Source: Phyllobates terribilis
Taxonomy: Eukaryota
Direction: 5' to 3'
NCBI RefSeq assembly: GCF_046119375.1
Contig: NW_027362767.1
Span: forward strand, 379,750,001 to 379,814,000
Length of the DNA: 64,000 nt
The position numbers were made by a program, and so were the translations under genes. Position 1 is the first letter of the stretch; the number at the start of each line of letters is the position of its first letter. This document shows, piece by piece, positions 27,643-59,833 of this stretch. The notes below the pieces were generated by a model. It saw nothing but the letters and a program-made list of their open reading frames with translations, ran no database searches and was not told the DNA's origin.

Positions 27643-29689
27643 CTGTGGATCAAAGTGCAAATAAAGAAAAAAAATAAAATTCTCCTATATTAGTAAAAGT
27701 TCGGGGTTATAGATAATTTAGTGAAAAAAAAATTATAATTGGTGGAGAAAAGTTGAACTTAATGGACCCAGGTCTTTTTTCAACCTATGTAACTAAATGT
27801 TATTTCCAATAAAGAGTCTTATCTCCGTGTAACTCCTTTTAAGGTGCCCTAGTGGTGGCCCGTAGCCCAGAATACCCTTTATTAGTGGGAGCATGGAGAA
27901 GTTTCTGAGCGACACATTCATTTAAAGAGTCACCAGGTAGCACCACATTGGTCTTGGGAGTGGTTGATCCAGTAGAAATGCATGGCAGCCTGCAGCCCTT
28001 CCTGGTGATGACAGCTGATAGTCAAGGGTGTTGGAGGGGGTACACCCCTTTAAAATATTATCCTTCAGATTTTAAAAAGAATCCATCACCAGGTTTTTGC
28101 TACCTCATCTGAGAGCAGCATAATGTAAAGGCAGATTCCCTGATTCCAGTGATGTGTCACTTAGAATCACAGTTTTCTCTGCTGCAGATCTAGCAGAGCT
28201 CTGAATGCTGAGCTCTGTATGCTGAGCTCTGTATAACCCCGCCCACACCACTGATTGGCAGCTTTCTGTGCACACTGTGTATAGGCAGAAACTGCTTATC
28301 AGTGGTGGGGGAGTAGTTGGACCAGGACATACCTTGTGATGTAGAGATAATCTCCTGCTGATAAAACACTTATTTAATTGAAACCCCAAAACACACCCTA
28401 GTAAGTGACAGATTGCTGGAATCAAGGTGTCTGCCCCTTCTTAATGTTGACATATTCCCATTAAGTCTTATAAGGAATGCATCATAAAAACATTACCTAT
28501 TTTTTTTTTCACTCTTCAGACCACGTTCAATTTTACTTTTAAAGTGTTACGGCACTTCTCAAAAACCCTTCATATGACGTAAAGACACGACAGAAGTTTT
28601 GATCGGTTGGGGCGCAGACGCTGAGATCTGAACCAGTCAATGAACAAAGGTGCACCAGTTGGCCACTCAGCTCCTTTCGAAGACTAAAGAGGTTCCCAAA
28701 GACAGTCGGAGTCTTCTGCTCCTTATTGATCAAAATTTCAACCAAGTAATTATGGGAAAATATTTTGAAAGTGCCATTACGCTTTACAACATCTTTTTTT
28801 TTTAAATAAACTTTTTATTTTTTTCAATATTCCCTTCTTTAATGGTGGAAGGGACTCGCCTTCAGACACTAATGGGACTGGGCAGCTCTGAATCACCAAT
28901 GTGACACCTCCTATCAGTGAGGCACCATCTCTTACAGCAGTGTCAGCTAAGTACTATGTCAATACTTTACTACTGATGAACAGAGGGGAAAGGCTTGGAG
29001 TTCTTTTGAATATGTTTGCCTTTATACTTATGCAAATGTGGTGACCATTTCAGGTTACCTGGCTTCCATTGTGTTGATATGCACATGAAATATAACACCT
29101 TCTTGAATATCCTAGGATTTTAATTAAAAGGTGTGTAAGGGACATTTGTATATATTTTCTGACTTGGTTGCTATATACTGTAGCATAATATTGGTGTATG
29201 CTTTTGTTGTCAGTTCCTTGGCTTATCTATTCTACCTTCTCATATGTCAATTTTTTTCACCTATCTAATACTATTAGCTATAGGGCCTACTAGGGCTATA
29301 AGAAGGTGAGCCTACATTATGCGGGGGCGCCATTTGCGTAACTAGGGTGCCAACCTCTACGGCTAGGCAGGGTATTTTACTTATGAGGGACTGTACAGGG
29401 GACTTCAGAGTGAGGTTATCAACATCTTTTGGCTAACGGTTCTCTCTGTTGTTACAACACCCTCAATTACAGCCATAGAGAGGCATAAGATTGACCCATA
29501 CCTTGTTCCCAGATTTCTTCAATGTTCAAAGTTTATACAGATACAGTGGCATGTAGAAGTTTGGGCACCCCTGGTCAAAATTACTGTTATTATGAACACT
29601 TAAGCAAGTTGAAGATGAAATGATCTCTAAAAAAGTTAAAGATGACACATTTCCTTTGTATTTTAGGCAAAAAAAAAAAAGAAGAAAAT

Positions 29690-31248
29690 TGTACATTCAC
29701 ACTGAAGGCATCAAAACTATGAATTAACACATGTGGAATTATATACTTAACAAAAAAGTGCGAAACAACTGAAAATATGTCTTATATTCTAGGTTCTTCA
29801 AAGTAGCCACCTTTTGCTTTGATGACTGCTTTGCACACTCTTGGCATTCTCTTGATGAGCTTCAAGAGGTAGTCACCGGAAATGGTCTTCCAACAATCTT
29901 GAAGGAGTTCCCAGAGATGCTTAGCACTTGTTGGCCCTTTTGCCTTCACTCTGCGGTCCAGCTTACCCCAAACCATCTTGATTGGGTTCAGGTCTGGTGA
30001 CTGTGGAGGCCAAGTCATCTGGCGTAGCACCCCATCACTTTCCTTCTTGGTCAAATAGCCCTTACACAGCCTGGAGGTGTGTTTGGGGTCATTGTCCTGT
30101 TGAAAAATAAATGATGGTCCAACTAAACGCAAACCGGACGGAATAGCATGCCGCTGCAAGATGCTGTGGTAGCCATGTTGGTTCAGTATGCCTTCAATTT
30201 TGAATAAATCCCCAACAGTGTCACCAGCAAAGCACCCCCACACCATCACACCTCCTCCTCCATGCTTCACGATGGGAACCAGGCATGTAGAGTCCATCCG
30301 TTCACCTTTTCTGCGTCGCACAAAGACACGTTGGTTGGAACCAAAGATCTGAAATTTGGACTCATCAGACCAAAGCACAGATTTCCAGTGGTCTAATGTC
30401 CATTCCTTGTGTTCTTTAGCCAAAACAAGTCTCTTCTGCTTGTTGCCTGTCCTTAGCAGTGGTTTCCTAGCAGCTATTTTACCAATAAGGCCTGCTGCAC
30501 AAAGTCTCCTTTTAACAGTTGTTGTAGAGATGTGTCTGCTGCTAGAACTCTGTGTGGCATTGCCCTGGTCTCTAATCTGAGCTGCTGTTAACCTGCGATT
30601 TCTGAGGCTGGTGACTCGAATAAACTTATCCTCAGAAGCAGAGGTGACTCTTGGTCTTCCTTTCCTGGGGCGGTCCTCATCTGAGCCAGTTTCTTTGTAG
30701 CGCTTGATGGTTTTTGCAACTGCACTTGGGGACACTTTCAAAGTTTGCCCAATTTTTCGGACTGACTGACCTTGATTTCTTAAAGTAATGATGGCCACTC
30801 GTTTTTCTTTACTTAGCTGCTTTTTTCTTATCATAATACAAATTCTAATAGTCTATTCAATAGGACTATCAGCTGTGTATCCACCTGACTTCTGCACAAC
30901 ACAACTGATGGTCCCAACCCCATTTATAAGGCAAGAAATCCCACTTATTAAACCTGACAGGGCACACCTGTGAAGTGAAAACCATTTCAGGTGACTACTT
31001 CTTGAAGCTGATCAAGAGAATGCCAAGAGTGTGCAAAGCAGTCATCAAAGCAAAAGGTGGCTACTTTGAAGAACCTAGAATAGAAGACATATTTTCAGTT
31101 GTTTCACACTTTTTTGTTAAGTATATAATTCCACAAGTGTTAATTCATAGTTTTGATGCCTTCAGTGTGAATGTACAATTTTCAAAGTAATGAAAATACA
31201 GAAAAATCTTCAAATGAGAAGGTGTGTCCAAACTTTTGGTCTGTACTG
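29690..31248 (-). mobile_element. Nested Tc1/mariner DD38E (Intruder-type) element, one terminus truncated
   Basis: Right end ...CTGTACTG|TA at 31248. A long inverted repeat (29690-29885 and ~30975-31180) includes the last transposase codons. Confidence 0.85.
29782..30834 (-). CDS. Tc1-family transposase ORF, 350 aa, DD38E spacing with catalytic Glu changed to Lys
   Basis: Motifs WSDES, QQDNDPKH and SPDLNPIKMVW. 38 residues counted between the Asp and the position of the Glu. Confidence 0.85.
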   Translation of the reverse strand: MIRKKQLSKEKRVAIITLRNQGQSVRKIGQTLKVSPSAVAKTIKRYKETGSDEDRPRKGRPRVTSASEDKFIRVTSLRNRRLTAAQIRDQGNATQSSSSRHISTTTVKRRLCAAGLIGKIAARKPLLRTGNKQKRLVLAKEHKEWTLDHWKSVLWSDESKFQIFGSNQRVFVRRRKGERMDSTCLVPIVKHGGGGVMVWGCFAGDTVGDLFKIEGILNQHGYHSILQRHAIPSGLRLVGPSFIFQQDNDPKHTSRLCKGYLTKKESDGVLRQMTWPPQSPDLNPIKMVWGKLDRRVKAKGPTSAKHLWELLQDCWKTISGDYLLKLIKRMPRVCKAVIKAKGGYFEEPRI

Positions 31249-34102: not shown

Positions 34103-35140
34103 TTAAGGCTTCTGTATTTCAGCCAGTACATCAGTCCATATACTAACACCAGGCACATCATAGTTCCCATCTTTACTTTTTAGGGTCCGAAGTCTAGTCA
34201 ATATGGAGTCTTTCACGTCTTCAGGTCCTTCCATCAGGTGCTTATAATGATCCATCAGTCCATCAAAAGTAAGGTTAAAGGAGTCACTACCCCATTTCCC
34301 ACAAGTCAGGTCTGGTTGCATACTACTCCCCATCTTAACCAAATGATCCATGTAGATGTTCCTGAATTTGGAGGACATGAAGCTTAATTTTGCCAGGACC
34401 TGGCATCTTACATTCATGAAAAGGCCACCAGAGAGGTCCTCATCTGACAGAAGCCAATCCAGGAGAAGATCAGATATGGGATCCTGGTGTTCGGATGCTT
34501 CATTAGATAAAAGAACAGCTACTAACAGGTGGTAGACATGTGGTCTAGAAATCCGGCCAAGAATATCTGAGACGATGAAGGACTTCTGGTTGTCTTCTGA
34601 CACCTCCAATCGTCCTTCTATACGTTTTCTCAGGAGGTTGGCTTGTGTCATTAGTATAGGGTTGTCTGATAACTCGTAAAATCCTTCAGACGCCAATAGA
34701 GGAAGAGCTAGAAGTAGTTGTGAGGCCACTTTTTTGGATATCACATGGGTTAAACTCATCGACTCAGCACCTTTGGATTCGGAGTTTCGGAGCAGTTCAG
34801 TCAGATACTTAAATACGGGATCGGGAAGAGCCTTGTTCTGGAGGAGAGACATACACAGGAGATCCCGGCCTTTACTCAGGTCATCAAACGTAACGTGATG
34901 GTAAGTTTTCAGATATCCAGAAAGTTCTTGGTTCTTCTCGGTAAGATGAGCTTCTATTGAGTTCCTAAGGGGTTTATTTGCATTGCACTGATGGTGGACA
35001 TGCTGAAAATAGGTTCCCCATTCAAGAGCTCGCTGGATGTGGAGGATATCCCAATCTTCGGCATGGACACTCTGAGATAGCGCCAGAACTTCTAGAAATT
35101 GGTCCAAATTGTCCAGCAGGGTCCTCATCTTCCCAGCCAT
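34103..35140 (-). CDS. FANCF: Fanconi anemia group F protein, single coding exon, 345 aa
   Basis: N-terminus MRTLLDNLDQFLEVLALS...WD...IQRALEWGTYFQH resembles human MESLLQHLDRFSELLAVS...WD...VRRALQWARYLRH. C-terminus VPGVSIWTDVL resembles human PGLSIWTDLL. Probable start MAGK at 35140 (alternative 35128), downstream of an acceptor TTCTACAATTTAG ending at 35158. Confidence 0.92.
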   Translation of the reverse strand: MAGKMRTLLDNLDQFLEVLALSQSVHAEDWDILHIQRALEWGTYFQHVHHQCNANKPLRNSIEAHLTEKNQELSGYLKTYHHVTFDDLSKGRDLLCMSLLQNKALPDPVFKYLTELLRNSESKGAESMSLTHVISKKVASQLLLALPLLASEGFYELSDNPILMTQANLLRKRIEGRLEVSEDNQKSFIVSDILGRISRPHVYHLLVAVLLSNEASEHQDPISDLLLDWLLSDEDLSGGLFMNVRCQVLAKLSFMSSKFRNIYMDHLVKMGSSMQPDLTCGKWGSDSFNLTFDGLMDHYKHLMEGPEDVKDSILTRLRTLKSKDGNYDVPGVSIWTDVLAEIQKP

Positions 35141-36817
35141 GATGCCATCACATCCACCTAAATTGTAGAAAGAGAGATGGGGAAAACAAGTGATGCCCCC
35201 AGATCCACAGGATAAATGCATCCGACCCCCCACCGATCCTGAGCATGGGAATAGGCACGGCAAAGTTAGCGAGCATGTGACCATGAGAACTTGTTCTATG
35301 TGGGAGAAATTGTACTAATAAATATTTTTGGGCTGTGAATATAGAGAGTAAAAAGTAATTTAGTCTATTTCCCCCCACATTTCATGCGGAGTAACCTGTT
35401 TTATTAAGTGGGTTGCCACCTTTGGGGATAATTCTTTTTATTATTACTTAAATACATCTATTTGGGGCTAAACATCATTTTTGCAATTGGGTTTCACTCA
35501 AAATATTGCAGCCTTTGCCTTCTATGGCCTCTGTGTTGCACGGAGTATTTCTGGGCTGCAGAATGAGATAAAGGGAACTTTGTCATGTGTTTCATGCCGC
35601 TCAAACCACGATCGCAGCCAGGTATATTTTTTTTCATGAAAAGTTTCAGCATTTCAGAGAAAATATACTCTACTCCCAGTGATTGACAGGTCTTTCGCTA
35701 TGGGAGAGACTTGTCAATCATCTGCAGGGATGCTGTAAGTAGCCAGCGGGGTTGGTGGTGCAAGACTTGACTCGTCTCCGACTCTTGTTGTAGAAAGTTC
35801 TTGCATCCTAACTGAGAAGTAGATGGCGTCTTTGCACTTGGGAAACGTTTTTATTTCGAAGGCCTGAGGCCAGATGACCTTTGTCGGGTCTTCGTTACAC
35901 AAACTTGAGGTCAGATGTCCATTCCAAACGAAGGTGAACCCTTTGAAGAAAGTGAACTCAGACCACCAAACACCAGACGGATTGTGAATAGAACAATGAC
36001 CCACCAGCTTGTCTTGTCAATGTTATCAACCAGAGCACCACAGGAGATGTCTACATAACAATGGCTGATCGTCCATTAGCAATATCTAACTATTGTATGT
36101 CAAGTGAGAGATATTGCAAATGGAGCATATTATCAAAGGTCCCGGCCAGGTCATCAAACAAGATTTACTCTTAAAACGCCATGCCCAAAAAATACACAGC
36201 GTGCTGCAACCGCACATTCAATCTGATTTGTGCAGCACAAATTGCTTGACATTGTCACTGAGCTTCTTCTGATGGGAGAGTTTGAGGTTCCTTTATCGGT
36301 CTTTTTCTGAGCTCCTATCGCTGATTTATGACCATGGACCACATCAAAGGTGAATGTGCAGGAAACAAAGAGCCTATGGCAGCAAAATGGTGCAATAATC
36401 CCAATTGCAAAAAAATGTTTTTTTTTTATTGTAAAATACATGGATTAAAAATTAAAAAAAAAAAAAAAAAAAATAGTCCTCAAAAGGTTTGACAACCCCT
36501 AACTGGTTTACCATCTTTGTGTCCATACCTGATGTGCATAATTGTGATGCCCATTATAATACATTTTACACAAAATAGTTCTTTATTTGACTGGATGCCA
36601 GTATATTATGCGGTGTCTATGACATGGGCGGCTGTCAGGGCGCTCGTCATACTGAGGCTGGCTTCACAAATCTGTGTTCCGTGATCCTGGTACGGACTGC
36701 AACCGCCCGGGCAGATTATGAACCGCCAGACCTGAATGAACAGTCTCATGTGCTTATAGTTCATGCCAGATCAGTGATCGGTCTGGAAATCACCGTCCAT
36801 ACATGTAATCGCCCTCT

Positions 36818-37999: not shown

Positions 38000-38600
38000 T
38001 AGAGGGGGCACCCCTCCGCGGAACCGTCTTTATCTAGTCAGCCGCCGCTCTCTGAGGTGAGCAGTCCCTGATAGCGGCTCTTCCTCAATCGATCACATAC
38101 GTTCTATAACGGCGTCCAAACAGCTTCACTGGCAGCAGCAGCGACTCTGCCCTTAGTAAATATGTCCGACGGCGTGGTGAGCGTACGTAAGTCGCGCAAG
38201 GATGACGTCACGGCCGCTCATTTTTGGGCAACAGATTACAAGAAGCCAATCGGAGTTCCCTGATCTAAAATGGCCGCTGAGGGTTACACATATTTCAGCG
38301 TTTCCGGATGACGTCACGGGGACAACGGAAAACGTCATTATTGTGTGTTTTTTTTTTTTTTTTTTTATAGGCAAGAGAGAGCGAGCAGAATGCCGAAGAG
38401 CTGCGTGGTCCCGGAGTGCAGGAGAGCGGAGACAGGCAGGGAAAGTTACTACAAGTGAGTGCGGGGCTGCTGCGCCTGTGTGGGGGAGGGGGCGGTGTGA
38501 CCTGTGCACAGGGACGTGCGGCTGGAAGTTCACTAGTGGCGGAGTCACCGCCCGGGCCGTGCAGTGCGTGGGGCGCGAACTCCGGACCGAACTTCTAGTC
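38000..38600. promoter_or_regulatory. CpG-rich, probably bidirectional promoter between FANCF and the THAP gene
   Basis: High CpG density, two CRE palindromes TGACGTCA (38203-38210, 38309-38316), CCAAT (38246-38250), YY1-like AAAATGGCCGC (38267-38277) and ETS-like TTCCGG. Confidence 0.7.
38390..38454 (+). CDS. THAP8: THAP-domain protein (THAP8/THAP5 subgroup), coding exon 1
   Basis: Encodes MPKSCVVPEC (first two Zn ligands)...SYY. Donor AA|GTGAGT. An acceptor ending at 38370 implies an upstream non-coding exon. Confidence 0.75.
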
Positions 38601-39140
38601 ACTTCCTTGTTGTATTTCATCTGTTTATTAGTGTTAACCATTTCCCCGCCAGACACTTTTTTTTTTTTTTTATAAGCTGTTTTTTTTTGTCCTTTATTTT
38701 TTAAGGACTGTAAATAATTTTTCTCGTTCAGATGTTGAAATACCGTAACTTTTTTTTTTAATCTTTTTTTTTTTGTTTATTATGCCGACATTTTTTAAAT
38801 TTTTTTTTACTTCTCTTTTATCTATCAGCTATCAGGAAAAATAATAGTAAAAACAAACAAAAAAACTCCAACAAAACAACCTATTGATCTGTGTTGGAGA
38901 GAAAAAAAAAATATATATTTTTCCTCTCCAGTAAGGAGCCCTGAAAACATTTTGTTTACTTTTCAGTAACAATGTTTCTTATCTATGGGACACAGTTTTT
39001 TAATCTTGTATGATGGAGTCAGGCCAGTAATAGTGATGCTGACTTGTAGCTTTTTTCTTTAGATGATTATTTATTATTTTTTTTCCCTACTTTTTATTTC
39101 ACACATTAGGTCCTAAATTAACTTAGGGAGGCATTTAAAT

Positions 39141-39583
39141 CAGGGCTGTACAGTCGGTTTAAAATGGACAGACTCTGACTCCTAAAATATATAATACATT
39201 TACATTGGGTTCAGTAGTACAATGCAGGATGTGCTGGAAATGTTTCCATAAGAATTTGGGAAAGTTATGAAATGTCCTATAAATGTCTGTTCCTGATCTA
39301 AGGATCTCGGCGTTTAGTTGAGATGAATCCGGGCTGCACGTCGTGTACGCGCTCAGTGGTGAGGCCGGGCGGCTGCACGTCGTGTATGCGCTCAGTGGTG
39401 AGGCCGGGCGGCTGCACGTCGTGTACGCGCTCAGTGGTGAGGCCGGGCGGCTGCACGTCGTGTACGCGCTCAGTGGTGAGGCCGGGCGGCTGCACGTCGT
39501 GTACGCGCTCAGTGGTGAGGCCGGGCTGTGAAGTTGGGGAAATTGAGGAGTTTGGGATTTGGCTCACCGACTCCACAGCCCTG
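39141..39583. mobile_element. Second copy of the hAT-type MITE, containing a 39-bp GC-rich tandem array (~39325-39527)
   Basis: TIRs CAGGGCTGT and CCGACTCCACAGCCCTG. Shares internal sequence with 32080-32405. Imperfect TSD ATTTAAAT/ATTTTAAA. About 5 copies of GGGCGGCTGCACGTCGTGTACGCGCTCAGTGGTGAGGCC. Confidence 0.8.
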
Positions 39584-40030
39584 ATTTTAAATACTTTTTT
39601 AAATCCGTTTTTCCCTGTAATAGTATTGGGTATATAACCCCCAGATTTGGGTCTATTGGGACCGAGCAGCTCCTGGTCCCCGGTCATCGGTAGGACAGGA
39701 GCTCTGTGCTTCCTATACTGTATACACAGAGATCCAGAAGGCAGAGCTGGTAGTAAACCCTCGCTGCCTTCCTTATGGGGAGTCTGGCTGTGTCTGACCC
39801 TCATCTCGCAGTGCACAATTTCGTCAGCTGCTTTCTCTTCAGTGACACTTTAGAACATTCCTGGACTACCGTGTCCATTTTAGTGTCCATTTTAGGACAT
39901 GATCAGATATCAAAATCAAACATCAGAATGATGTCAGTTTGAGGCTAAATACCCTGTCTGAGAACTGATTTTGACGAGTGACTTTTACAACTGTAGTAAT
40001 AATAATAATAATAAAAAGTAACTATTCACT

Positions 40031-40090
40031 GATGGGACTTGAACCCAAAATTCTGTGTCCCAAAGCCAGTGCACTAACCACTAAGCTATT
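40031..40090 (-). ncRNA. tRNA-like Pol III cassette (Pro-TGG-like pseudo-tRNA) in the left arm; mirror copy at ~41870-41925 (+)
   Basis: A box TAGCTTAGTGG, loop GCTTTGGGA, B box GGGTTCAAGTCC and downstream TTTTT. No proper acceptor stem. Confidence 0.55.
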
Positions 40091-40346
40091 AACTTAGTTG
40101 TCTAAAACTCATTGGGACATATGCACAGACTGCAAGCAAGCCAAATTCAAATGATGTTTGATTTTGATGTGTGAGTCTGATGTGTGACTTTCTTCAAACA
40201 TCAGAATCAGAATCACAATGACTTTTTGACTTTGTCACCCTGAGTATTTTCATGGTTGATCTCATAAGACAAGAAAAGCTACTAGTTGCTATCACTTGAC
40301 TGGATAGTGCAATGGTAAGGCATCAGTCTCTCAAACTACAGTATCA

Positions 40347-41101
40347 GGCTATGTGCCCACGATGCAGAAATGAAGCAGAAAATTTCTGCAGCATTTCTGC
40401 ATCTCCCTGGCAAAAAAAACTTATGCAGATTGTGCATGCGTTTTTCCTGCAGAATACATGCGTTTCCGCATGCAGATTGACAAGCACTTTCCAGGCGATA
40501 GCATCACTTGGAAAGTGCTTGACAACTAGGTCACACTATATAAATCCATGCAAACAGCATGGATTTATACAGTGTGAGCAGTGACCGTAAAAATTAAAAA
40601 AATAAAGCTATACTTACCTCCGATGCTGTCGCACTCCTTCCTGGTTCCTTCCTGGCTTGCCGGCATCTCGCGAGACATGACCGCGACGTCATCTCAGGTC
40701 CTGGAAGGAGAAGCGCTGCAGGGGCCGCCGGACAGGTGAATATAAACTTTATTTGTTATTTTATTCTTTTTTTTACAGGTACATTGGTACCCAGGTCTGG
40801 ATGAGAGTCTTCTCTCCTCCAGAACTGGGTACCATCCGCACATTGAAACACATATTATCTGCTTGTACAAATGTACAGACACGGATTCTATGCGTCTCAA
40901 TGCAAGTCAATGGTGGCGCTTCCGCAAAATTAATGAACATGCTGCGGATTTATGAGCGCTGCAGAAACGCTGCGGAAAAATCCGCAGCATGTGCATTGAC
41001 ATTGCGGAATGCCATTGGGGACCATGGGTGCGGATTACCATGCGTTTTTGATGCGTTTCCGCTGCGGAAATGCATGAAAAACTCGTCGTGTGCACGCAGC
41101 C
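40347..41101. mobile_element. PIF/Harbinger-type MITE nested in the foldback left arm
   Basis: TIRs GGCTATGTGCCCACG and CGTGTGCACGCAGCC, with 3-bp TSD TCA. It splits the tRNA-like cassette that is intact in the other arm. Confidence 0.8.
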
Positions 41102-41557
41102 TCAGAGTTCAAATCCTGATAGGAAGAAGGATGTTTCTTTTTTTTTTTTTTTCTTAATTATGACTGTTTAGCACACAAACTACAGGGGTGTTTTACTTTT
41201 AATATCTGACACTCTGATTGTCATACTGATGTGTTAAGAGTTTCAGACACGCTGTATATTTGCATGGTAAATTACATAGCCAAAGTAAATTGTAAATATT
41301 TACAATAAAGACATTTTATCATTAGACCCCTTTAAGAAATTATGCAAATATAAAGTCACTTGGAAATAGATATGTAGTAAATTAGTGCCTCCCAATTTAC
41401 TTTGACTATGTAATTTACCATGCAAATAGACAGCATGTCTGAAACTCTGTCATCTTGATGTATTAAATCAGTGTCAGATATTAAAAGTAAAACACCCCTG
41501 TAGTTTGTGTGCTAAATAGTCATAATTTAAAAAAAAATAAAAAATAACAATCTTATT

Positions 41558-41625
41558 CCTATCAGGATTTGAACTCTGACACTGTAGTTTCAGAGACTGA
41601 CGCCTTACCATTGCGCTATCCAGTC
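41558..41625 (-). ncRNA. tRNA-like Pol III cassette (Gln-CTG-like pseudo-tRNA) in the right arm
   Basis: A box TAGCGCAATGG, loop GTCTCTGAAAC, B box GAGTTCAAATCC and downstream T-runs. Acceptor stem does not pair. Confidence 0.55.
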
Positions 41626-42717
41626 AAATGATAGTAGCTGACAGCTTTTCTTGTCTTATGAGATCAACGATGAAAATACTCAGGATGACTAAAAGTCATT
41701 ATGATTCTGATGTTTGAAGAAAGTCACACATCAGACTCACACATCAGAATCAAACATCATTTGAATTTGGCTTGCTTGCAGTCTGTGCATACGTCCCAAT
41801 GAGTTTTAGACAACTTTGCACTGAAAATCATATAACCAAACAGAATTCCAAGGCTTTTACAACTAAGTTAATAGGTTAGTGCACTGGCTTTGGGACACAG
41901 AAATTTGGGTTCATGTCCCATCAGCGAACAGTTACTTTTTTTTTTTATTATTATTACTGGTGTAAGAATCGCCCGTCGGAATCGCTTCTCAGACAGGGTA
42001 TTTAGCCTCAAACTGACATCATTCTGATGTTTGATTTTGATATCTGATCATGTCCTAAAATGGACACTGTACTGGACATTTTACGTCCATGGGCGGTTTG
42101 GAAGCAGCTAATGATGACAGTAGAGACAATAGACCGGGATCATCCATAAAACCCCTTCAGTCAATTAATTTTACAGCTATGTAATTGATGCAAACCGCCG
42201 TGAATGTGCAGATGTATACTTGCTATGTTACCGATACAGAGAACTCTGATCCCGGGTGTTTAATTCCCTTGAGGGCACAGTCCATAGTGATTGCTGCATC
42301 AAGGTAGCTAGGTAGAGGGACATGCATATTCTGTCATGGTGGGTGGATGGGTAATGATGCCCCACTCCAGGTCTGCCAACGGTACAGTCAGACGACTGTA
42401 TAAATTGGAGTGCAGTTCACAGATTGGCTTGCGGCTCTCCCTGTATATTTCTATACAGCTGTCACGCTCGGGTCAGGAGAGCCGTCGGTCAGTCTGTGCA
42501 CTGCGTTCCGATCTCGTTCCCATTTATCCGGCCGTCTGACTGCACCTTAAGCTTACAGGGATTAATAGGAAAAATGTGACAGGGACAGTACATGGTACAT
42601 TATATAGGTGATCACATTCCCTTGAAGGAAATGTGTTATCAGAAAAGGACCTATTGTTTAAATAGAGGTTTTGTGTGTTTTTTTTTCACACTGGCCACTA
42701 GGCCTAATACTAGACTC

Positions 42718-42950
42718 ACAGGATCCACATTCACAATAGGTGATGTCACAGCTCACCTCTTCCTCCTCCTGTACAGTGACTGATAACACCTCTATATACA
42801 GTAGATAACACAGGATCCACCATTCACAATAGGTGATGTCACAGCTCACCTCCTCCTCCTCCTGTACAATAACTGATCGCACCTCTATATACAGTAAATA
42901 ACACAGGATCCACCATTCACAATAGAGGATGTCACAGCTCGCCTCCTCCT
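42718..42950. repeat. ~90-bp tandem repeat (about 2.5 copies)
   Basis: GGATCCACCATTCACAATAGGTGATGTCACAGCTCACCTCCTCC... recurs three times. Confidence 0.75.
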
Positions 42951-43245
42951 CTCATAATGACTTTTGTCAACTGAAAAACAAAAAAGAATATGAAGACAGA
43001 AAAACAAATGCTATTTTAAATGAAGCCTTCCTTGTCTATGACTCTTGTATGTCGGTGGTGTAAAAAATATTCTGTATATCATATAGAGTCCAAAATTGTC
43101 TTTAAGAAGGTGATTAGGTAACAGACGTGCGCTCTGGTTCTGGCGATGGTGCTGGAGTCGGCAATGCTCTGCAGACGACTGTACGGAGGTGACATCCAGC
43201 GCCTCCATCGTTTTTCACATGACTGATTCTCCTTGTTTCCCCCAG

Positions 43246-45361: not shown

Positions 45362-45459
45362 GTAAGTGGATAGACTGTATGGAGGTTAAGTCTAACTCAT
45401 ATATTTACATCCCTGGAAGCCTTAGGGGCCTGTGCTCGCATCCCCGGTAGCCTTAGGGG

Positions 45460-45960
45460 TCTGTGGTAGCGTCCCCGGTGGTCTTGTGGGGGAAGGCCTG
45501 TGGTCGCGTCCCCGGTGGTCTTGTGGGGGAAGGCCTGTGGTCGCGTCCCCGGTGGTCTTGTGGGGGAAGGCCTGTGGTCGCGTCCCCGGTGGTCTTGTGG
45601 GGGAAGGCCTGTGGTCGCGTCCCCGGTGGTCTTGTGGGGGATGGCCTGTGGTCGCGTCCCCGGTGGTCTTGTGGGGGAAGGCCTGTGGTCGCGTCCCCGG
45701 TGGTCTTGTGGGGGATGGCCTGTGGTCGCGTCCCCGGTGGTCTTGTGGGGGATGGCCTGTGGTCGCGTCCCCGGTGGTCTTGTGGGGGATGGCCTGTGGT
45801 CGCGTCCCCGGTGGTCTTGTCGGGGATGGCCTGTGGTCGCGTCCCCGGTGGTCTTGTTGGGGATGGCCTGTGGTCGCGTCCCCGGTGGTCTTGTCGGGGA
45901 TGGCCTGTGGTCGCGTCCCCGGTGGTCTTGTCGGGGATGGCCTGTGGTCGCGTCCCCGGT
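45460..45960. repeat. 37-bp GC-rich minisatellite (~13 copies) in THAP intron 3
   Basis: Unit GGCCTGTGGTCGCGTCCCCGGTGGTCTTGTGGGGGA(A/T). Confidence 0.93.
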
Positions 45961-46106
45961 AAGTTTTCCAGAATGAGTAGTTCCTTGCGATTGCCATATG
46001 TCCTGGCTGGTGGTGTACTGGGTTGGGCTATCCGCCCTCATAATGTCTATATAATGTAGTGCTGACCCTTCCTTGAAGTTTGTGTTTTTATTTTTATTTC
46101 TTTTAG

Positions 46107-54157: not shown

Positions 54158-54519
54158 CAGGCTCGGTCTGGCCTGGCGGGGCGCCGGGAAATTTCCCGGT
54201 GGGCCCCGGGCCCCTTGCAGAGAGAACAGGAGAATTGAAAAAAAAAAGTGGTCGTGGGCCCTTTAAGGGCTCGCGCACGCTCTTTCACCGACGCGATGCC
54301 CAGGACAGTAGCGGGAGGGGCCTGGGAGCAGGAGAGCAGGGGCTGCACTGCAGCGTCACACTCAGCAGACAGGGAAGCACGTCTGCTAAAAGTGACGTCA
54401 CAGCGCGCCCTGCACCGCAGTCTCCCACATTAGGAGCGTGTCTGTACACTGTATGGGCTGGAGACAAGCCAAGGTACTGTAATATTTGTGTGTTTGTATG
54501 GATTTTTATGTATATGCTG

Positions 54520-57500
54520 CCTGCATGTGTGTGTGTACAGTGTGTGTATATGCCTGTGTGTGTGTGTACAGTGTGTGTATATGCCTGTGTGTGTGTATAT
54601 GCCTGTGTGTGTATATGCCTGTGCGTGTACAGTGTGTGTATATGCCTGTCTGTGTATATGCCTGTGCATGTACAGTGTGTGTATATGCCTGTGCATGTAC
54701 AGTGTGTGTATATGCCTGTGCGTGTACAGTGTGTGTATATGCCTGTGTGTGTATATGCCTGTGTGTATGCCTGTGTGTACAGTGTGTGTATATGCCTGTG
54801 TGTACAGTGTGTGTATATGCCTGTGTGTGTATGCCTGTGTGTACAGTGTGTGTATATGCCTGTGTGTACAGTGTGTGTATATGCCTGTGTGTACAGTGTG
54901 TGTGTATGCCTGTGTGTATAGTGTGTGTATATGCCTGTGTGTACAGTGTGTGTATATGCCTGTGTGTACAGTGTGTGTATATGCCTGTGTGTGTATGCCT
55001 GTGTACAGTGTGTGTATATGCCTGTGTGTACAGTGTGTGTATATTCCTGTGTGTGTACAGTGTGTGTGTATGCCTGTGTGTACAGTGTGTGTATGCCTGT
55101 GTGTACAGTGTGTATATGCCTGTGTGTATATGCCTGTGTGTGTACAGTGTGTGTGTACAGTGTGTATATGCCTGTGTGTACAGTGTATGTATATTCCTGT
55201 GTGTGTGTACAGTGTATGTATATTCCTGTGTGTGTGTACAGTGTGTGTATATGCCTGTGTACAGTGTGTGTATATGCCTGTGTGTAGTGTGTGTATATGC
55301 CTGTGTACAGTGTATATATGCCTGTGTGTACAGTGTATATATGCCTGTGTGTGTACAGTGTGTGTATATGCCTGTGTGTGTACAGTGTGTGTATATGCCT
55401 GTGTGTGTACAGTGTGTGTATATGCCTGTGCGTGTACAGTGTGTGTATATGCCTGTGCGTGTACAGTGTGTGTATATGCCTGTGCGTGTACAGTGTGTGT
55501 ATATGCCTGTGTGTGTGTACAGTGTGTGTATATGCCTGTGTGTGTACAGTGTGTGTATATGCCTGTGTACAGTGTGTGTATATGCCTGTGTACAGTGTGT
55601 ATATATGCCTGTGTACAGTGTGTGTATATGCCTGTGTGTACAGTGTGTGTATATGCCTGTGTGTACAGTGTGTGTATATGCCTGTGTGTACAGTGTGTGT
55701 ATATGCCTGTGCATGTACAGTGTGTGTATATGCCTGTGCGTGTACAGTGTGTGTATATGCCTGTGTGTGTATATGCCTGTGTGTGTATATGCCTGTGTGT
55801 GTATATGCCTGTGTGTGTATATGCCTGTGTGTGTATATGCCTGTGTGTACAGTGTGTGTATATGCCTGTGTGTGTATATGCCTGTGTGTGTATATGCCTG
55901 TGTGTGTATGCCTGTGTGTACAGTGTGTGTATATGCCTGTGTGTACAGTGTGTGTATATTCCTGTGTGTGTGTACAGTGTGTGTGTATGCCTGTGTGTAC
56001 AGTGTGTGTATATGCCTGTGTGTGTACAGTGTGTGTATATGCCTGTGTGTGTACAGTGTGTGTATATGCCTGTGTGTGTACAGTGTGTGTATATGCCTGT
56101 GTGTGTACAGTGTGTGTATATGCCTGTGTGTGTACAGTGTGTGTATATGCCTGTGTGTGTACAGTGTGTGTATATGCCTGTGTGTGTACAGTGTGTGTAT
56201 ATGCCTGTGTGTGTGTGTACAGTGTGTATATGCCTGTGTGTACAGTGTGTATATTCCTGTGTGTGTGTACAGTGTGTGTATATGCCTGTGTGTACAGTGT
56301 GTGTATATGCCTGTGTGTACAGTGTGTGTATATGCCTGTGTGTACAGTGTGTGTATATGCCTGTGTGTACAGTGTGTGTATATGCCTGTGTGTACAGTGT
56401 GTGTATATGCCTGTGTACAGTGTGTGTATATGCCTGTGTACAGTGTGTGTATATGCCTGTGTACAGTGTGTGTATATGCCTGTGTGTGTACAGTGTGTGT
56501 ATATGCCTGTGTGTGTACAGTGTGTGTATATGCCTGTGTGTGTACAGTGTGTGTATATGCCTGTGTGTGTACAGTGTGTGTATATGCCTGTGTGTGTACA
56601 GTGTGTGTATATGCCTGTGTGTGTACAGTGTGTGTATATGCCTGTGTGTGTACAGTGTGTGTATATGCCTGTGTGTGTACAGTGTGTGTATATGCCTGTG
56701 TGTACAGTGTGTGTATATGCCTGTGTGTACAGTGTGTGTATATGCCTGTGTGTACAGTGTGTGTATATGCCTGTGTGTACAGTGTGTGTATATGCCTGTG
56801 TGTACAGTGTGTGTATATGCCTGTGTGTACAGTGTGTGTATATGCCTGTGTGTACAGTGTGTGTATATGCCTGTGTGTACAGTGTGTGTATATGCCTGTG
56901 TGTACAGTGTGTGTATATGCCTGTGTACAGTGTGTGTATATGCCTGTGTGTGTACAGTGTGTGTATATGCCTGTGTGTGTACAGTGTGTGTATATGCCTG
57001 TGTGTGTACAGTGTGTGTATATGCCTGTGTGTGTACAGTGTGTGTATATGCCTGTGTGTGTACAGTGTGTGTATATGCCTGTGTGTGTACAGTGTGTGTA
57101 TATGCCTGTGCGTGTACAGTGTGTGTATATGCCTGTGCGTGTACAGTGTGTGTATATGCCTGTGCGTGTACAGTGTGTGTATATGCCTGTGCGTGTACAG
57201 TGTGTGTATATGCCTGTGCGTGTACAGTGTGTGTATATGCCTGTGCGTGTACAGTGTGTGTATATGCCTGTGCGTGTACAGTGTGTGTATATGCCTGTGC
57301 GTGTACAGTGTGTGTATATGCCTGTGCGTGTACAGTGTGTGTATATGCCTGTGCGTGTACAGTGTGTGTATATGCCTGTGCGTGTACAGTGTGTGTATAT
57401 GCCTGTGCGTGTACAGTGTGTGTATATGCCTGTGCGTGTACAGTGTGTGTATATGCCTGTGCGTGTACAGTGTGTGTATATGCCTGTGCGTGTACAGTGT

Positions 57501-58840
57501 GTGTATATGCCTGTGCGTGTACAGTGTGTGTATATGCCTGTGCGTGTACAGTGTGTGTATATGCCTGTGCGTGTACAGTGTGTGTATATGCCTGTGCGTG
57601 TACAGTGTGTGTATATGCCTGTGCGTGTACAGTGTGTGTATATGCCTGTGCGTGTACAGTGTGTGTATATGCCTGTGCGTGTACAGTGTGTGTATATGCC
57701 TGTGCGTGTACAGTGTGTGTATATGCCTGTGCGTGTACAGTGTGTGTATATGCCTGTGCGTGTACAGTGTGTGTATATGCCTGTGCGTGTACAGTGTGTG
57801 TATATGCCTGTGCGTGTACAGTGTGTGTATATGCCTGTGCGTGTACAGTGTGTGTATATGCCTGTGCGTGTACAGTGTGTGTATATGCCTGTGCGTGTAC
57901 AGTGTGTGTATATGCCTGTGCGTGTACAGTGTGTGTATATGCCTGTGCGTGTACAGTGTGTGTATATGCCTGTGCGTGTACAGTGTGTGTATATGCCTGT
58001 GCGTGTACAGTGTGTGTATATGCCTGTGCGTGTACAGTGTGTGTATATGCCTGTGCGTGTACAGTGTGTGTATATGCCTGTGCGTGTACAGTGTGTGTAT
58101 ATGCCTGTGCGTGTACAGTGTGTGTATATGCCTGTGCGTGTACAGTGTGTGTATATGCCTGTGCGTGTACAGTGTGTGTATATGCCTGTGCGTGTACAGT
58201 GTGTGTATATGCCTGTGCGTGTACAGTGTGTGTATATGCCTGTGCGTGTACAGTGTGTGTATATGCCTGTGCGTGTACAGTGTGTGTATATGCCTGTGCG
58301 TGTACAGTGTGTGTATATGCCTGTGCGTGTACAGTGTGTGTATATGCCTGTGCGTGTACAGTGTGTGTATATGCCTGTGCGTGTACAGTGTGTGTATATG
58401 CCTGTGCGTGTACAGTGTGTGTATATGCCTGTGCGTGTACAGTGTGTGTATATGCCTGTGCGTGTACAGTGTGTGTATATGCCTGTGCGTGTACAGTGTG
58501 TGTATATGCCTGTGCGTGTACAGTGTGTGTATATGCCTGTGCGTGTACAGTGTGTGTATATGCCTGTGCGTGTACAGTGTGTGTATATGCCTGTGCGTGT
58601 ACAGTGTGTGTATATGCCTGTGCGTGTACAGTGTGTGTATATGCCTGTGCGTGTACAGTGTGTGTATATGCCTGTGCGTGTACAGTGTGTGTATATGCCT
58701 GTGCGTGTACAGTGTGTGTATATGCCTGTGCGTGTACAGTGTGTGTATATGCCTGTGCGTGTACAGTGTGTGTATATGCCTGTGCGTGTACAGTGTGTGT
58801 ATATGCCTGTGCGTGTACAGTGTGTGTATATGCCTGTGTG
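54520..58840. repeat. ~4.3-kb TG-rich satellite, 27-bp dominant unit
   Basis: Unit GTGTGTATATGCCTGTG(C/T)GTGTACAGT. Variable 25-29-bp units at left, essentially perfect 27-mers from about 57100 to 58830. Confidence 0.97.
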
Positions 58841-58995
58841 TTTGTGTCTTCACACATACGTGTGTGTGTGCTTCCCTGCGTGTCTGCATTTTTGTGTGTG
58901 ATTGTCTGAGTGTGTCTGTGCATTTCTGTGTGTGCTTGCCTGTGTGTGTACGTGTCCCCATTTCTGTGAGTATGTGTATCTGCGTGTGTATATTA

Positions 58996-59833
58996 GGGCT
59001 CTTTCACATGTCCTGATATTTACGGGACTGGAGATATCCGTGTCCACCTGTGTGTCATCCAAGTGACTCATACTGGCGCTTGGGAATCAGTATACAGTTA
59101 GCGCTGTTCCCAAGAGCCGGGTGCTGAGCGCTGCCCTCATCATAGATCCCTGCAGGCGCTGTGATCAGCAGCAGCGGGGTCAATGATGAGAGTAGTAGTC
59201 TACTCCCACCGTGTCCAACTGTAAAAATAAGAATAAAATCAAAAAATCCTTATACTCACCTCTCCTAAGTGTCACCTGCTGTAATCCGTGTGAGCGCTCA
59301 TGCCGAGAAGAATGACTCCTGCAGCGAGCTTGCTCCAGAGCTGCGCTTATTGAATGACAGGGCACCGCTTGTTGAGCGCAGCTCCGGAGCCCACTCGCTG
59401 CAGGAGACATTCTCCTCGGCGTGAGCGCTCGCACGGATTACAGTGGGTGACACTTAGTAGAGGTTAGTATAAGGTTTTTTTTATTTTATTCTTTTTACAG
59501 TTGGACACAGCGGGTATAGACTATTACTCTCATCATTGACCCTGCTGGTGCTGATTGCAGCACCTTCAGGGATCTATGATGAGGGCAGTTCTCAGCGCTC
59601 TTCCCAAGCACCGCGTGCTAACGGTCATCAGTGTGCGGGACATTTCGCGGTCTGGACAGCAGGTAAAAAACAGACATGTCAGCGTGTTTTGCCCACGGAC
59701 ACCACATGATCTGTGGAAAGTGGAAACACACTGACATGTGCACATACGCATTCATGTGAATGGGTCTACGTGTGTCAGTGTCTCTGGTACGTGTGGAAAC
59801 GGTCACTGCATGTACTGACGTGTGAAAGAGCCC
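58996..59833. mobile_element. PIF/Harbinger-type MITE
   Basis: TIRs GGGCTCTTTCACATGTC and GACGTGTGAAAGAGCCC, with TSD TTA. Confidence 0.8.

What the first reader, a model, noticed from the sequence alone, without database searches (positions are those of the whole stretch)
39869..42069. Foldback DNA element carrying two divergent tRNA-like Pol III cassettes per arm, inside THAP intron 1
Seen: ~650-bp inverted arms around a ~100-bp AT-rich loop, with TA-flanked C(A/C)GTG ends typical of Tc1/mariner termini. Each arm holds an outward-facing Pro(TGG)-like cassette and an inward-facing Gln(CTG)-like cassette. The best-preserved copies (40031-40090 and 41558-41625) match the type-2 Pol III A box and B box and are followed by oligo-T terminators, but their acceptor stems do not pair. 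The architecture is neither a normal SINE nor a tRNA gene. Inference: the element may carry TFIIIC sites acting as chromatin barriers or produce short Pol III RNAs. Its arms could also form long dsRNA in THAP pre-mRNA, a possible ADAR or endo-siRNA substrate.
Basis: partly seen in the sequence, partly recalled or inferred. Interest (0 to 1): 0.72.

Follow-up and report, generated by a model that had tools for sequence, protein, structure and literature searches.

The report
Frog foldback transposon with tRNA-like units
This is a worn copy of an abundant frog "jumping gene" with no gene of its own. Its two mirror-image arms each carry two tRNA-derived units that look like small RNA polymerase III genes. 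The layout is real and unusual, but nothing shows that the units are used.

Summary
Window 39869-42069 is a foldback element with arms of about 670 bp around a 100-nt loop of 26% GC. Its ends are TA|CCGTG and CACTG|TA. It lies in the intron that splits the THAP-domain coding exons.

Each arm has an outward Pro(TGG)-like unit and an inward Gln(CTG)-like unit, each followed by a T-run. The only two A-box/B-box pairs with tRNA spacing in the 64-kb window lie in this element (shuffles average 0.125).

These are not tRNA genes. ARAGORN finds none, Rfam tRNA scores are 18.9 and 12.3 bits (threshold 29), and there is no acceptor stem or cloverleaf.

Only two of the four units are intact. A 755-bp nested MITE splits the left inner unit. 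A 7-nt deletion removes the A box of the right outer unit. The best unit has an internal T4.

Public runs show a high-copy family with sharp edges at the stated ends, also held in a run labelled as another organism. The arms are best conserved at the termini (98.8%), not in the units (90-94%). No discrete Pol III RNA was seen.

Verdict: a decayed non-autonomous Tc1/mariner-type foldback transposon with captured tRNA-derived modules, function unproven. The scan found this family before on other DNA (s1-201007, s1-196810).

The parts
39867..39868 (.). TA target-site duplication, left
   Evidence: Repeat depth rises from 415 to 83,756 between the bins ending at 39869 and starting at 39870.
39869..40346 (+). 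Left arm, outer part. It starts with terminus CCGTG and has a 12-nt tandem duplication at 39871-39894.
   Evidence: Inverted-repeat pairs I1-I4, BLAST self-match 39872-40347 against 42078-41576, and the arm alignment.
39909..39929 (+). Subterminal 21-nt motif (ATCAAAATCAAACATCAGAAT), a candidate transposase-binding site. Its mirror copy is at 42021-42041 (-).
   Evidence: the window holds 8 matches at up to 5 mismatches, all inside the element. The terminal 80 aligned nt are 98.8% identical between the arms.
40031..40090 (-). Left outer tRNA-like unit, Pro(TGG)-like, pointing outward. A box 40078-88, B box 40035-45, internal T4 at 40047-50, T5 terminator at 40013-17.
   Evidence: A box 0 mismatches, B box 1 mismatch; Rfam tRNA 18.9 bits against a threshold of 29, model positions 8-63 only; no cloverleaf.
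40148..40194 (-). Three overlapping copies, 13 nt apart, of the subterminal motif, inverted relative to the terminal copy. Mirror copies are at 41717-41763 (+).
   Evidence: (I15, D4, D6).
40297..40346 (+). Left inner tRNA-like unit, 5' half (A box 40305-15, 2 mismatches). It is cut off from its B box by the nested MITE.
40347..41101 (.). Nested, unrelated 755-bp MITE. TIRs are GGCTATGTGCCCACG and GGCTGCGTGCACACG. TSD is TCA at 40344-46 and 41102-04.
   Evidence: Word depth is about ten times that of the foldback, and 172 contigs carry unrelated flanks at 40346.
41105..41292 (+). Left arm, inner part, with the 3' half of the left inner unit (B box 41106-16) and its T15 terminator (41138-52).
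   Evidence: I5-I7; 41102-41579 self-inverted.
41293..41392 (.). Loop of 100 nt, 26% GC.
   Evidence: (I6 has 100 nt between its arms).
41393..42069 (-). Right arm, ending in CACTG. It carries a 42-nt segment (about 41816-41858) that the left arm lost between ACAACT direct repeats.
   Evidence: Contigs of other copies contain the 42-nt segment (records 16, 22, 23, 32).
41558..41625 (-). Right inner tRNA-like unit, Gln(CTG)-like, pointing toward the loop. A box 41608-18, B box 41565-75, T6 and T9 terminators at 41529-44.
   Evidence: A box 1 mismatch, B box 2 mismatches; Rfam tRNA 12.3 bits, model positions 7-64.
41862..41930 (+). Right outer tRNA-like unit, decayed. A 7-nt deletion removes the A box, and the B box at 41908-18 has T where nearly all other copies have A. 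The T11 terminator is at 41936-46.
   Evidence: One search gives the family majority letters at 41875 (G>C), 41903 (A>T) and 41914 (T>A).
42070..42071 (.). TA target-site duplication, right
   Evidence: Depth falls to about 6 in the bin starting at 42150.

Best explanation
This is one old, decaying copy of a high-copy, non-autonomous, cut-and-paste DNA transposon of the Tc1/mariner type. It has a TA target duplication and TACAGTG-type ends, and it is built as a foldback: two arms of about 670 bp around a 100-nt loop, about 1.45 kb before a second MITE landed in it.

Movement (inferred): a transposase supplied in trans probably moves it. That enzyme would recognise the near-identical terminal ~90 bp and the repeated 13/21-nt subterminal motifs.

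Origin of the units (inferred): each arm contains a block with two divergently oriented tRNA-derived units, one Pro(TGG)-like and one Gln(CTG)-like. Each unit keeps A and B boxes at tRNA spacing and a downstream T-run. The same block sits at mirrored positions in both arms, so it was part of the arm before the arm was duplicated in inverted orientation. The likeliest source is DNA-level capture of a pair of tRNA pseudogenes or SINE-head-like units. The units then spread as passengers of the transposon.

This copy: two of the four units are destroyed and the rest drift like the surrounding DNA. The copy sits passively in the intron that splits the THAP domain. If that intron is transcribed, the RNA should fold into a long imperfect hairpin, as any intronic inverted repeat would.
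For: Shown here:
- Arms, loop and TA/CAGTG-type ends.
- Repeat-family status with sharp edges at 39869/70 and about 42070. Summed word depth is 1e4-8e4 against about 6 in the unique flank. Many diverged contigs were laid, including from a run labelled organism B.
- No ORF longer than 55 aa in the arms.
- The only two A+B box pairs with tRNA spacing in the 64-kb window are in the element, against 0.125 in shuffles. Local Rfam tRNA alignments give anticodon-loop triplets UGG and CUG.
- All four units are mirrored between the arms.
- Decay: the nested MITE splits the left inner unit, and a 7-nt deletion removes the right outer A box. The arms differ by 37 changes in 571 columns, of which 23 are transitions and 7 are CpG-type. 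CpG counts are 3 and 9.
- Identity between arms is highest at the termini (98.8%) and only 90% and 94% in the units.
- The family majority has better boxes than this copy at 40308, 41875 and 41914.

The scan's earlier follow-up on another copy reached the same reading (s1-201007). That is a lead, not independent proof.
Against: - No autonomous partner with matching ends was found. The two Tc1 elements in the window have different termini.
- The superfamily call rests on a single TA duplication and the terminal letters.
- The six bases outside each TA are both CTGGAC, which is unexplained.
- I could not obtain other copies as sequence, so there is no family consensus, no copy count and no per-site conservation.
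- I could not compare the element with Repbase or Dfam.
- That every unit keeps a T-run, and that the family majority keeps good boxes, is also what working Pol III units would show.
Confidence: 0.78

Rival explanations
1. The units are working Pol III genes in at least the intact copies of the family. TFIIIC would bind the A and B boxes, and Pol III would make RNAs of about 90 nt that end in the T-runs. This would benefit the transposon, for example by keeping its ends in open chromatin, or it would be tolerated noise. In this copy the left outer and right inner units, both antisense to THAP, would be the active ones.
For: Two units have A and B boxes at 43-nt spacing with 0-2 mismatches. A T-run of at least 5 lies 17-20 nt downstream of every unit. 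The family majority letters restore the consensus boxes (40308 T>C, 41875 G>C, 41914 T>A). The same four-unit layout was noted at two other places in the genome.
Against: - The outer unit has an internal T4 between its boxes (40047-50). By the majority T at 41903, the family has it too. From general knowledge of vertebrate Pol III, T4 can terminate transcription.
- There is no acceptor stem or stable fold. Fold z-scores are -0.14 to -1.8.
- The units are no better conserved between the arms than the spacer.
- Contigs from possible RNA runs over the units (for example 41480-41680) run past both the predicted start and the terminators. The unique intron flanks are almost absent from those runs, so they say nothing about transcription.
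Confidence: 0.14
2. The host has co-opted this particular copy. It would act either as a TFIIIC-bound chromatin barrier 1.4 kb downstream of the first THAP exon, or as an intronic hairpin that feeds ADAR editing or endo-siRNA production and so tunes THAP expression.
For: The + strand RNA is predicted to form 605 inter-arm pairs with a 90-bp perfect helix. Foldback MITE transcripts are Dicer substrates in tree shrew (PMC4408798). SINE copies act as chromatin boundaries in mouse (PMC8136502, title and abstract).
Against: - Half of the units are broken, and a second MITE sits inside the arm.
- The arms have diverged by 6.5-16%, with CpG decay typical of methylated, unconstrained DNA.
- Any intronic inverted repeat would give the same fold prediction.
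- The excess of A>G and T>C in the laid contigs is the direction that CpG decay of this copy would give, and the contigs are other copies, not transcripts of this locus.
Confidence: 0.04
3. The tRNA likeness is either chance in AT-rich repeat DNA, or the result of separate SINE insertions into each arm after the foldback formed.
For: The Rfam scores are below threshold (18.9 and 12.3 bits against 29), and ARAGORN finds nothing.
Against: Two independent A+B pairs at exact tRNA spacing lie within 1.45 kb, where 0.125 are expected in 64 kb. Both units sit at mirrored positions in both arms and share their flanks. They have no A-rich tails or their own target duplications.
Confidence: 0.03

Closest known systems
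Long-TIR (foldback) MITEs of the Tc1/mariner superfamily, for example MariN1 of the tree shrew (PMC4408798)
   Same: It has no coding capacity and a high copy number. Almost the whole element consists of two inverted arms. It is TA-flanked, and its transcript is predicted to form a near-complete hairpin.
   Different: The arms here are about 670 bp and carry tRNA-derived Pol III-type units. No matching autonomous transposon was identified, and siRNA production was not tested.
MER6, a Tc1/mariner-type DNA transposon that spread the SINE-specific V domain in mammals (PMC6887750, title and abstract)
   Same: In both, a cut-and-paste element carries and amplifies a piece of SINE or Pol III-related sequence as a passenger.
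   Different: Here the cargo is the promoter-bearing tRNA-like part itself, in two kinds, with terminators, and duplicated in mirror image to give four units.
tRNA-derived SINEs and amphibian Pol III-type repeats (OAX in Xenopus, Rana/PolIII, PolIII/TAN in newt; listed in PMC12054243)
   Same: Both have tRNA-related sequence with internal A and B boxes, and the tRNA structure has decayed.
   Different: Those repeats are retroposed or tandemly arrayed. Here the units lie inside a TA-flanked inverted-repeat DNA element, end in T-runs rather than LINE-type or A-rich tails, and have no target duplications of their own. No sequence comparison with those repeats was possible.
Classical foldback elements (Drosophila FB; Tetris of D. 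virilis, PMC4079207)
   Same: Both have long inverted arms with internal short repeats and a small central region.
   Different: FB and Tetris arms are built from tandem-repeat arrays. Here only a short 13-nt triple repeat is present, and the ends are of the TA/CAGTG type.
True tRNA genes
   Same: Both have A and B boxes at canonical spacing, an anticodon-loop-like segment and a downstream oligo-T.
   Different: There is no acceptor stem and no cloverleaf. The Rfam score is below threshold and ARAGORN is negative.

Membership tests
Non-autonomous Tc1/mariner-type DNA transposon (MITE-like) | TA target-site duplication flanking terminal inverted repeats | tested here: met
   TA is at 39867-8 and 42070-1. 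The ends are CCGTG and CACTG, and the terminal 80 aligned nt are 98.8% identical. This is one copy only, so the TA is not statistically strong on its own.
Non-autonomous Tc1/mariner-type DNA transposon (MITE-like) | Many dispersed copies with the same ends and different flanks | tested here: met
   word depth is 1e4-8e4 inside the element against about 6 in the unique flank, with steps at 39869/70 and about 42070. Diverged contigs appear in four runs from two organism labels. The depths are not copy numbers.
Non-autonomous Tc1/mariner-type DNA transposon (MITE-like) | No transposase gene of its own | tested here: met
   The longest ORF in the arms is 55 aa. The 134-aa ORF lies in the nested MITE.
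Non-autonomous Tc1/mariner-type DNA transposon (MITE-like) | An autonomous DD34E/D partner with matching termini | tested here: inconclusive
   The terminal 23-mer occurs only at the two ends of this element. The two Tc1 elements in the window have other termini.
Foldback element | Inverted arms make up nearly the whole element, with a short unpaired centre | tested here: met
   Arms of 666 and 677 nt surround a 100-nt loop. The fold gives 605 inter-arm pairs.
tRNA gene | Cloverleaf with a paired acceptor stem, detected by tRNA finders | tested here: not met
   ARAGORN finds 0 genes. Rfam RF00005 scores are 18.9 and 12.3 bits against a threshold of 29, as local matches to positions 7/8-63/64 only. 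The MFE folds are not cloverleaves.
Type-2 Pol III transcription unit | A box and B box at 30-60 nt spacing plus a downstream T-run of at least 4 | tested here: met
   This is met for 2 of the 4 units, left outer and right inner. The other two are broken. The outer unit also has an internal T4.
Type-2 Pol III transcription unit | Pol III-dependent transcripts or TFIIIC/Pol III occupancy | not testable with these tools
   Only assembled contigs of runs of unknown library type were available. They cannot show starts, ends or strand.
tRNA-derived SINE | Retroposed unit: tRNA-related head, body, LINE-type or A-rich tail, and its own target duplication | tested here: not met
   The units are about 60-70 nt of tRNA-like sequence followed by T-runs. 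No flanking direct repeats or A-tails are present, and the units are mirrored in both arms. Whether free copies of the units exist elsewhere in the genome could not be tested.

The most novel reading that the evidence does not exclude
The four tRNA-like units may be a maintained, working part of the transposon family rather than dead cargo. TFIIIC and Pol III would load on them in the arms and help the element, for example by keeping its ends accessible to transposase or by shielding it from heterochromatin. This would be a DNA transposon family with built-in Pol III modules that also seeds thousands of potential TFIIIC sites across a frog genome.
Probability: 0.1. Interest if true: 0.7.

Novelty: new variant of a known kind. 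Interest (0 to 1): 0.33.

Why it matters
If the units work, a cut-and-paste transposon would be spreading ready-made Pol III promoters and TFIIIC sites through a vertebrate genome. That role is so far mainly associated with SINEs, and it would bear on chromatin boundaries and small-RNA production.

As it stands, the finding documents an unusual cargo, two kinds of tRNA-derived unit mirrored to give four, in an otherwise ordinary foldback MITE. It also shows that this particular intronic copy is decaying. Its main value is for annotation: the cassettes should not be called tRNA genes or SINEs.

Tried and rejected
Getting other copies as sequence failed by every route:
- Exact-pattern scans found nothing: metagenome contigs with two conserved 24-25-mers, genome contigs and viral contigs. 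These collections hold no frog DNA.
- A word search with a 47-aa ORF that runs across the right outer unit found no candidates. The 39-aa left-arm ORF was too short for the tool.
- An exact look-up of the window's intact Tc1 transposase found nothing on record.
- A homologue search with that transposase returned fish and frog proteins, mostly on contigs of 1-2 kb or as single loci. Sampling at about 20 kb per look-up would not be expected to hit a copy, so I dropped this route.

Other negative results:
- BLAST of the element against the rest of the window found no second copy.
- Rfam at gathering threshold found nothing in the whole window.
- An A/B-like pair at 14151-14197 is a chance match.
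- Literature searches found no described DNA transposon with this layout. Repbase and Dfam are not available here, so the family may still be catalogued.

Rejected readings:
- The excess of A>G and T>C in the laid contigs is not editing. The contigs are other copies, and CpG decay of this copy gives the same direction.
- I did not use the per-bin depth to rank parts of the element, because the tool warns against that.

Full report
**What is there.** Reading the region and running the repeat finder show a foldback. Segments 39872-40347 pair with 41576-42078, and 41097-41292 pair with 41393-41584, around a 100-nt centre. BLAST of the element against the window gives the same two inverted self-matches and no other copy in the 64 kb.

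A global alignment of the arms, with the inserted block removed, gives 84% identity over 711 aligned positions. Over 571 well-aligned columns it gives 93.5%: 37 differences, of which 23 are transitions and 7 are of CpG type. The loop, 41293-41392, is 26% GC, and the arms are about 36% GC.

The ends are TA|CCGTG on the left and CACTG|TA on the right. The left end carries a 12-nt tandem duplication (39871-82 and 39883-94). The terminal 23-mer occurs nowhere else in the window, and none is expected by chance.

One addition matters. The left arm is split by an unrelated 755-bp MITE at 40347-41101. That MITE has its own 15-nt inverted ends and a TCA duplication at 40344-46 and 41102-04. This is why the element is 2.2 kb and not about 1.45 kb.

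**The tRNA-like units.** I scanned for the type-2 Pol III consensus boxes (TRGCNNAGTGG and GGTTCGANTCC).
- Left outer unit, minus strand: A box with 0 mismatches at 40078-88. This is the only perfect A box in the window. The B box at 40035-45 has 1 mismatch.
- Right inner unit, minus strand: A box with 1 mismatch at 41608-18 and B box with 2 mismatches at 41565-75.
- Both have 43 nt from box start to box start, as in tRNA genes.

In the whole window, on both strands, these are the only two such pairs. Forty composition-preserving shuffles gave a mean of 0.125 and never more than one.

The Rfam tRNA model aligns locally to both units. The scores are 18.9 bits (positions 8-63) and 12.3 bits (positions 7-64), against a gathering score of 29. 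These alignments place UGG and CUG at the anticodon position. The labels "Pro(TGG)-like" and "Gln(CTG)-like" are therefore fair as labels.

The units are not tRNA genes. ARAGORN reports none. The acceptor positions do not pair. The minimum-energy folds are not cloverleaves and are no more stable than shuffles, with z-scores from -0.14 to -1.8.

Every unit is followed by a T-run within about 20 nt: T5 after the left outer unit, T15 after the left inner, T6 and T9 after the right inner, and T11 after the right outer. In each arm the two units are back to back, about 205 nt apart. The outer one points to the terminus and the inner one to the loop.

**State of this copy.** Only two units are intact.
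- The nested MITE sits between the A and B boxes of the left inner unit.
- The right outer unit lost seven bases of its A box, and its B box has a T where nearly all other copies have A.
- The best unit, the left outer, has a T4 between its boxes (40047-50 on the minus strand).
- The left arm has also lost 42 nt just upstream of its outer unit, between ACAACT repeats. Contigs from other copies contain that segment.

**It is a repeat family.** I laid contigs of four public runs on 39300-42700 at 80% likeness or better.
- Summed word depth is 1e4-8e4 across the arms and about 6 in the unique intron just to the right.
- The steps fall between 39869 and 39870 and close to 42070, which are the proposed ends.
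- The nested MITE is about ten times deeper and shows 172 contigs with unrelated left flanks.
- Contigs 80-93% like the arms occur in all four runs, including one labelled as a different organism. The family is therefore shared by related species.
- Contigs from the best DNA run cross both junctions without a difference, but that run may be the source of the assembly.
- Where the table lists the family majority letter, it restores the box consensus that this copy has lost: 40308 T>C, 41875 G>C, 41914 T>A.

**Transposon features.** The arms hold no ORF above 55 aa. A 21-nt motif sits 40 nt from each terminus. Three overlapping copies of it, 13 nt apart, lie inverted about 240 nt further in. All eight matches in the window are in the element. 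The terminal ~80 aligned nt are the best-kept part of the arms, at 98.8%.

These features fit sites for a transposase supplied in trans. No partner was found. The window's two Tc1 elements have other ends.

The only form of that test I could run is arm against arm:

| Region | Identity between arms |
|---|---|
| Termini | 98.8% |
| Outer unit | 90% |
| Spacer | 92% |
| Inner unit | 94% |

By this test the units are not privileged. In the truncated list of family-majority differences, the two right-arm units carry at least as many private changes per base as the rest of that arm.

The runs guessed to be RNA cover all parts of the repeat, not the units specifically. Their contigs over the right inner unit (for example 41480-41680) extend beyond both the predicted start and the terminators. 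These runs barely cover the unique intron, so they say nothing about transcription.

The + strand, which is the sense strand of the THAP gene, is predicted to fold into a hairpin. It has 605 inter-arm pairs, a longest perfect helix of 90 bp, and an MFE of -1270 kcal/mol. Without the nested MITE the MFE is -922, against about -309 for shuffles. This follows from the inverted repeat itself and is not evidence of use.

**Context.** The open frame 38312-38455 ends with the first THAP residues (MPKSCVVPEC...). Window 43223-43489 matches the rest of the THAP domain (PF05485, profile positions 22-87, E 1.3e-12). The element therefore lies in the intron that splits the THAP domain, as stated. FANCF lies upstream on the other strand.

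**Interpretation.** The simplest account is a non-autonomous Tc1/mariner-type foldback transposon. Its arm picked up a block with two divergent tRNA-derived units before the arm was duplicated in mirror image, and the units then spread as cargo.
- Shown: the structure, the ends, the repeat status, the tRNA relation, and the decay of this copy.
- Inferred: the superfamily (from one TA duplication and the terminal letters), the order of events, and the passenger status of the units.

The main rival is that intact family members carry working Pol III units. This is not excluded, and I give it about one chance in seven. Co-option of this particular copy by the host is unlikely.

**Known relatives.** Foldback MITEs of mariner type whose transcripts feed Dicer are described in tree shrew (PMC4408798). 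A Tc1/mariner-type element that spread a SINE domain is described for MER6 (PMC6887750). Amphibian tRNA-like Pol III repeats such as OAX and Rana/PolIII are tandem or SINE-like (PMC12054243).

I found no paper describing a DNA transposon with four tRNA-like units in its arms. Repbase and Dfam could not be consulted.

The scan itself has already met this family on other DNA. One follow-up (s1-201007) reached the same verdict, and another first-stage note (s1-196810) describes the same layout. I rate it a new variant of a known kind, of moderate interest.

Noticed in passing
window 40347-41101: An extremely abundant 755-bp MITE is nested in the left arm. Its ends are GGCTATGTGCCCACG and GGCTGCGTGCACACG, and its TSD here is TCA. 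Its word depth is about ten times that of the foldback. In other copies the flank consensus ends in ..CTA followed by A, which suggests a TAA target of the PIF/Harbinger kind.
   Followed up: partly
window 39134-39590: A probable MITE with 25-nt inverted ends (39134-58 and 39566-90) surrounds six 39-bp tandem repeats (39293-39565). Contigs from other loci join its right end directly to the start of the abundant nested MITE (joints 39581/83/88 to 40346).
   Followed up: no
window 39861-39866 and 42072-42077: The six bases just outside each TA are both CTGGAC, giving CTGGAC-TA-[element]-TA-CTGGAC. This may be chance, or the target may have been a short direct repeat. It remains unexplained.
   Followed up: no
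window 29684-31183: A Tc1-like element has 207-nt inverted repeats at 97% identity and an intact 350-aa transposase ORF (29782-30834, minus strand). Its closest database proteins (86-92% identity) come from unnamed contigs, fishes and poison frogs, which is compatible with recent activity or horizontal spread.
   Followed up: partly
window 34103-35284 (-): An intact single-exon FANCF gene is present (Pfam PF11107, E 2e-82).
   Followed up: partly
window 42728-42951 and 54285-59016: There is a 93-bp tandem repeat (2-3 copies) just downstream of the element, and a CA-rich low-complexity tandem array of about 4.6 kb further on.
   Followed up: no
window 45397-46059: A tandem array follows the large THAP-gene exon. 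It reads open in several frames on both strands and yields proline/arginine/threonine-rich repeat ORFs of about 37 aa period.
   Followed up: no
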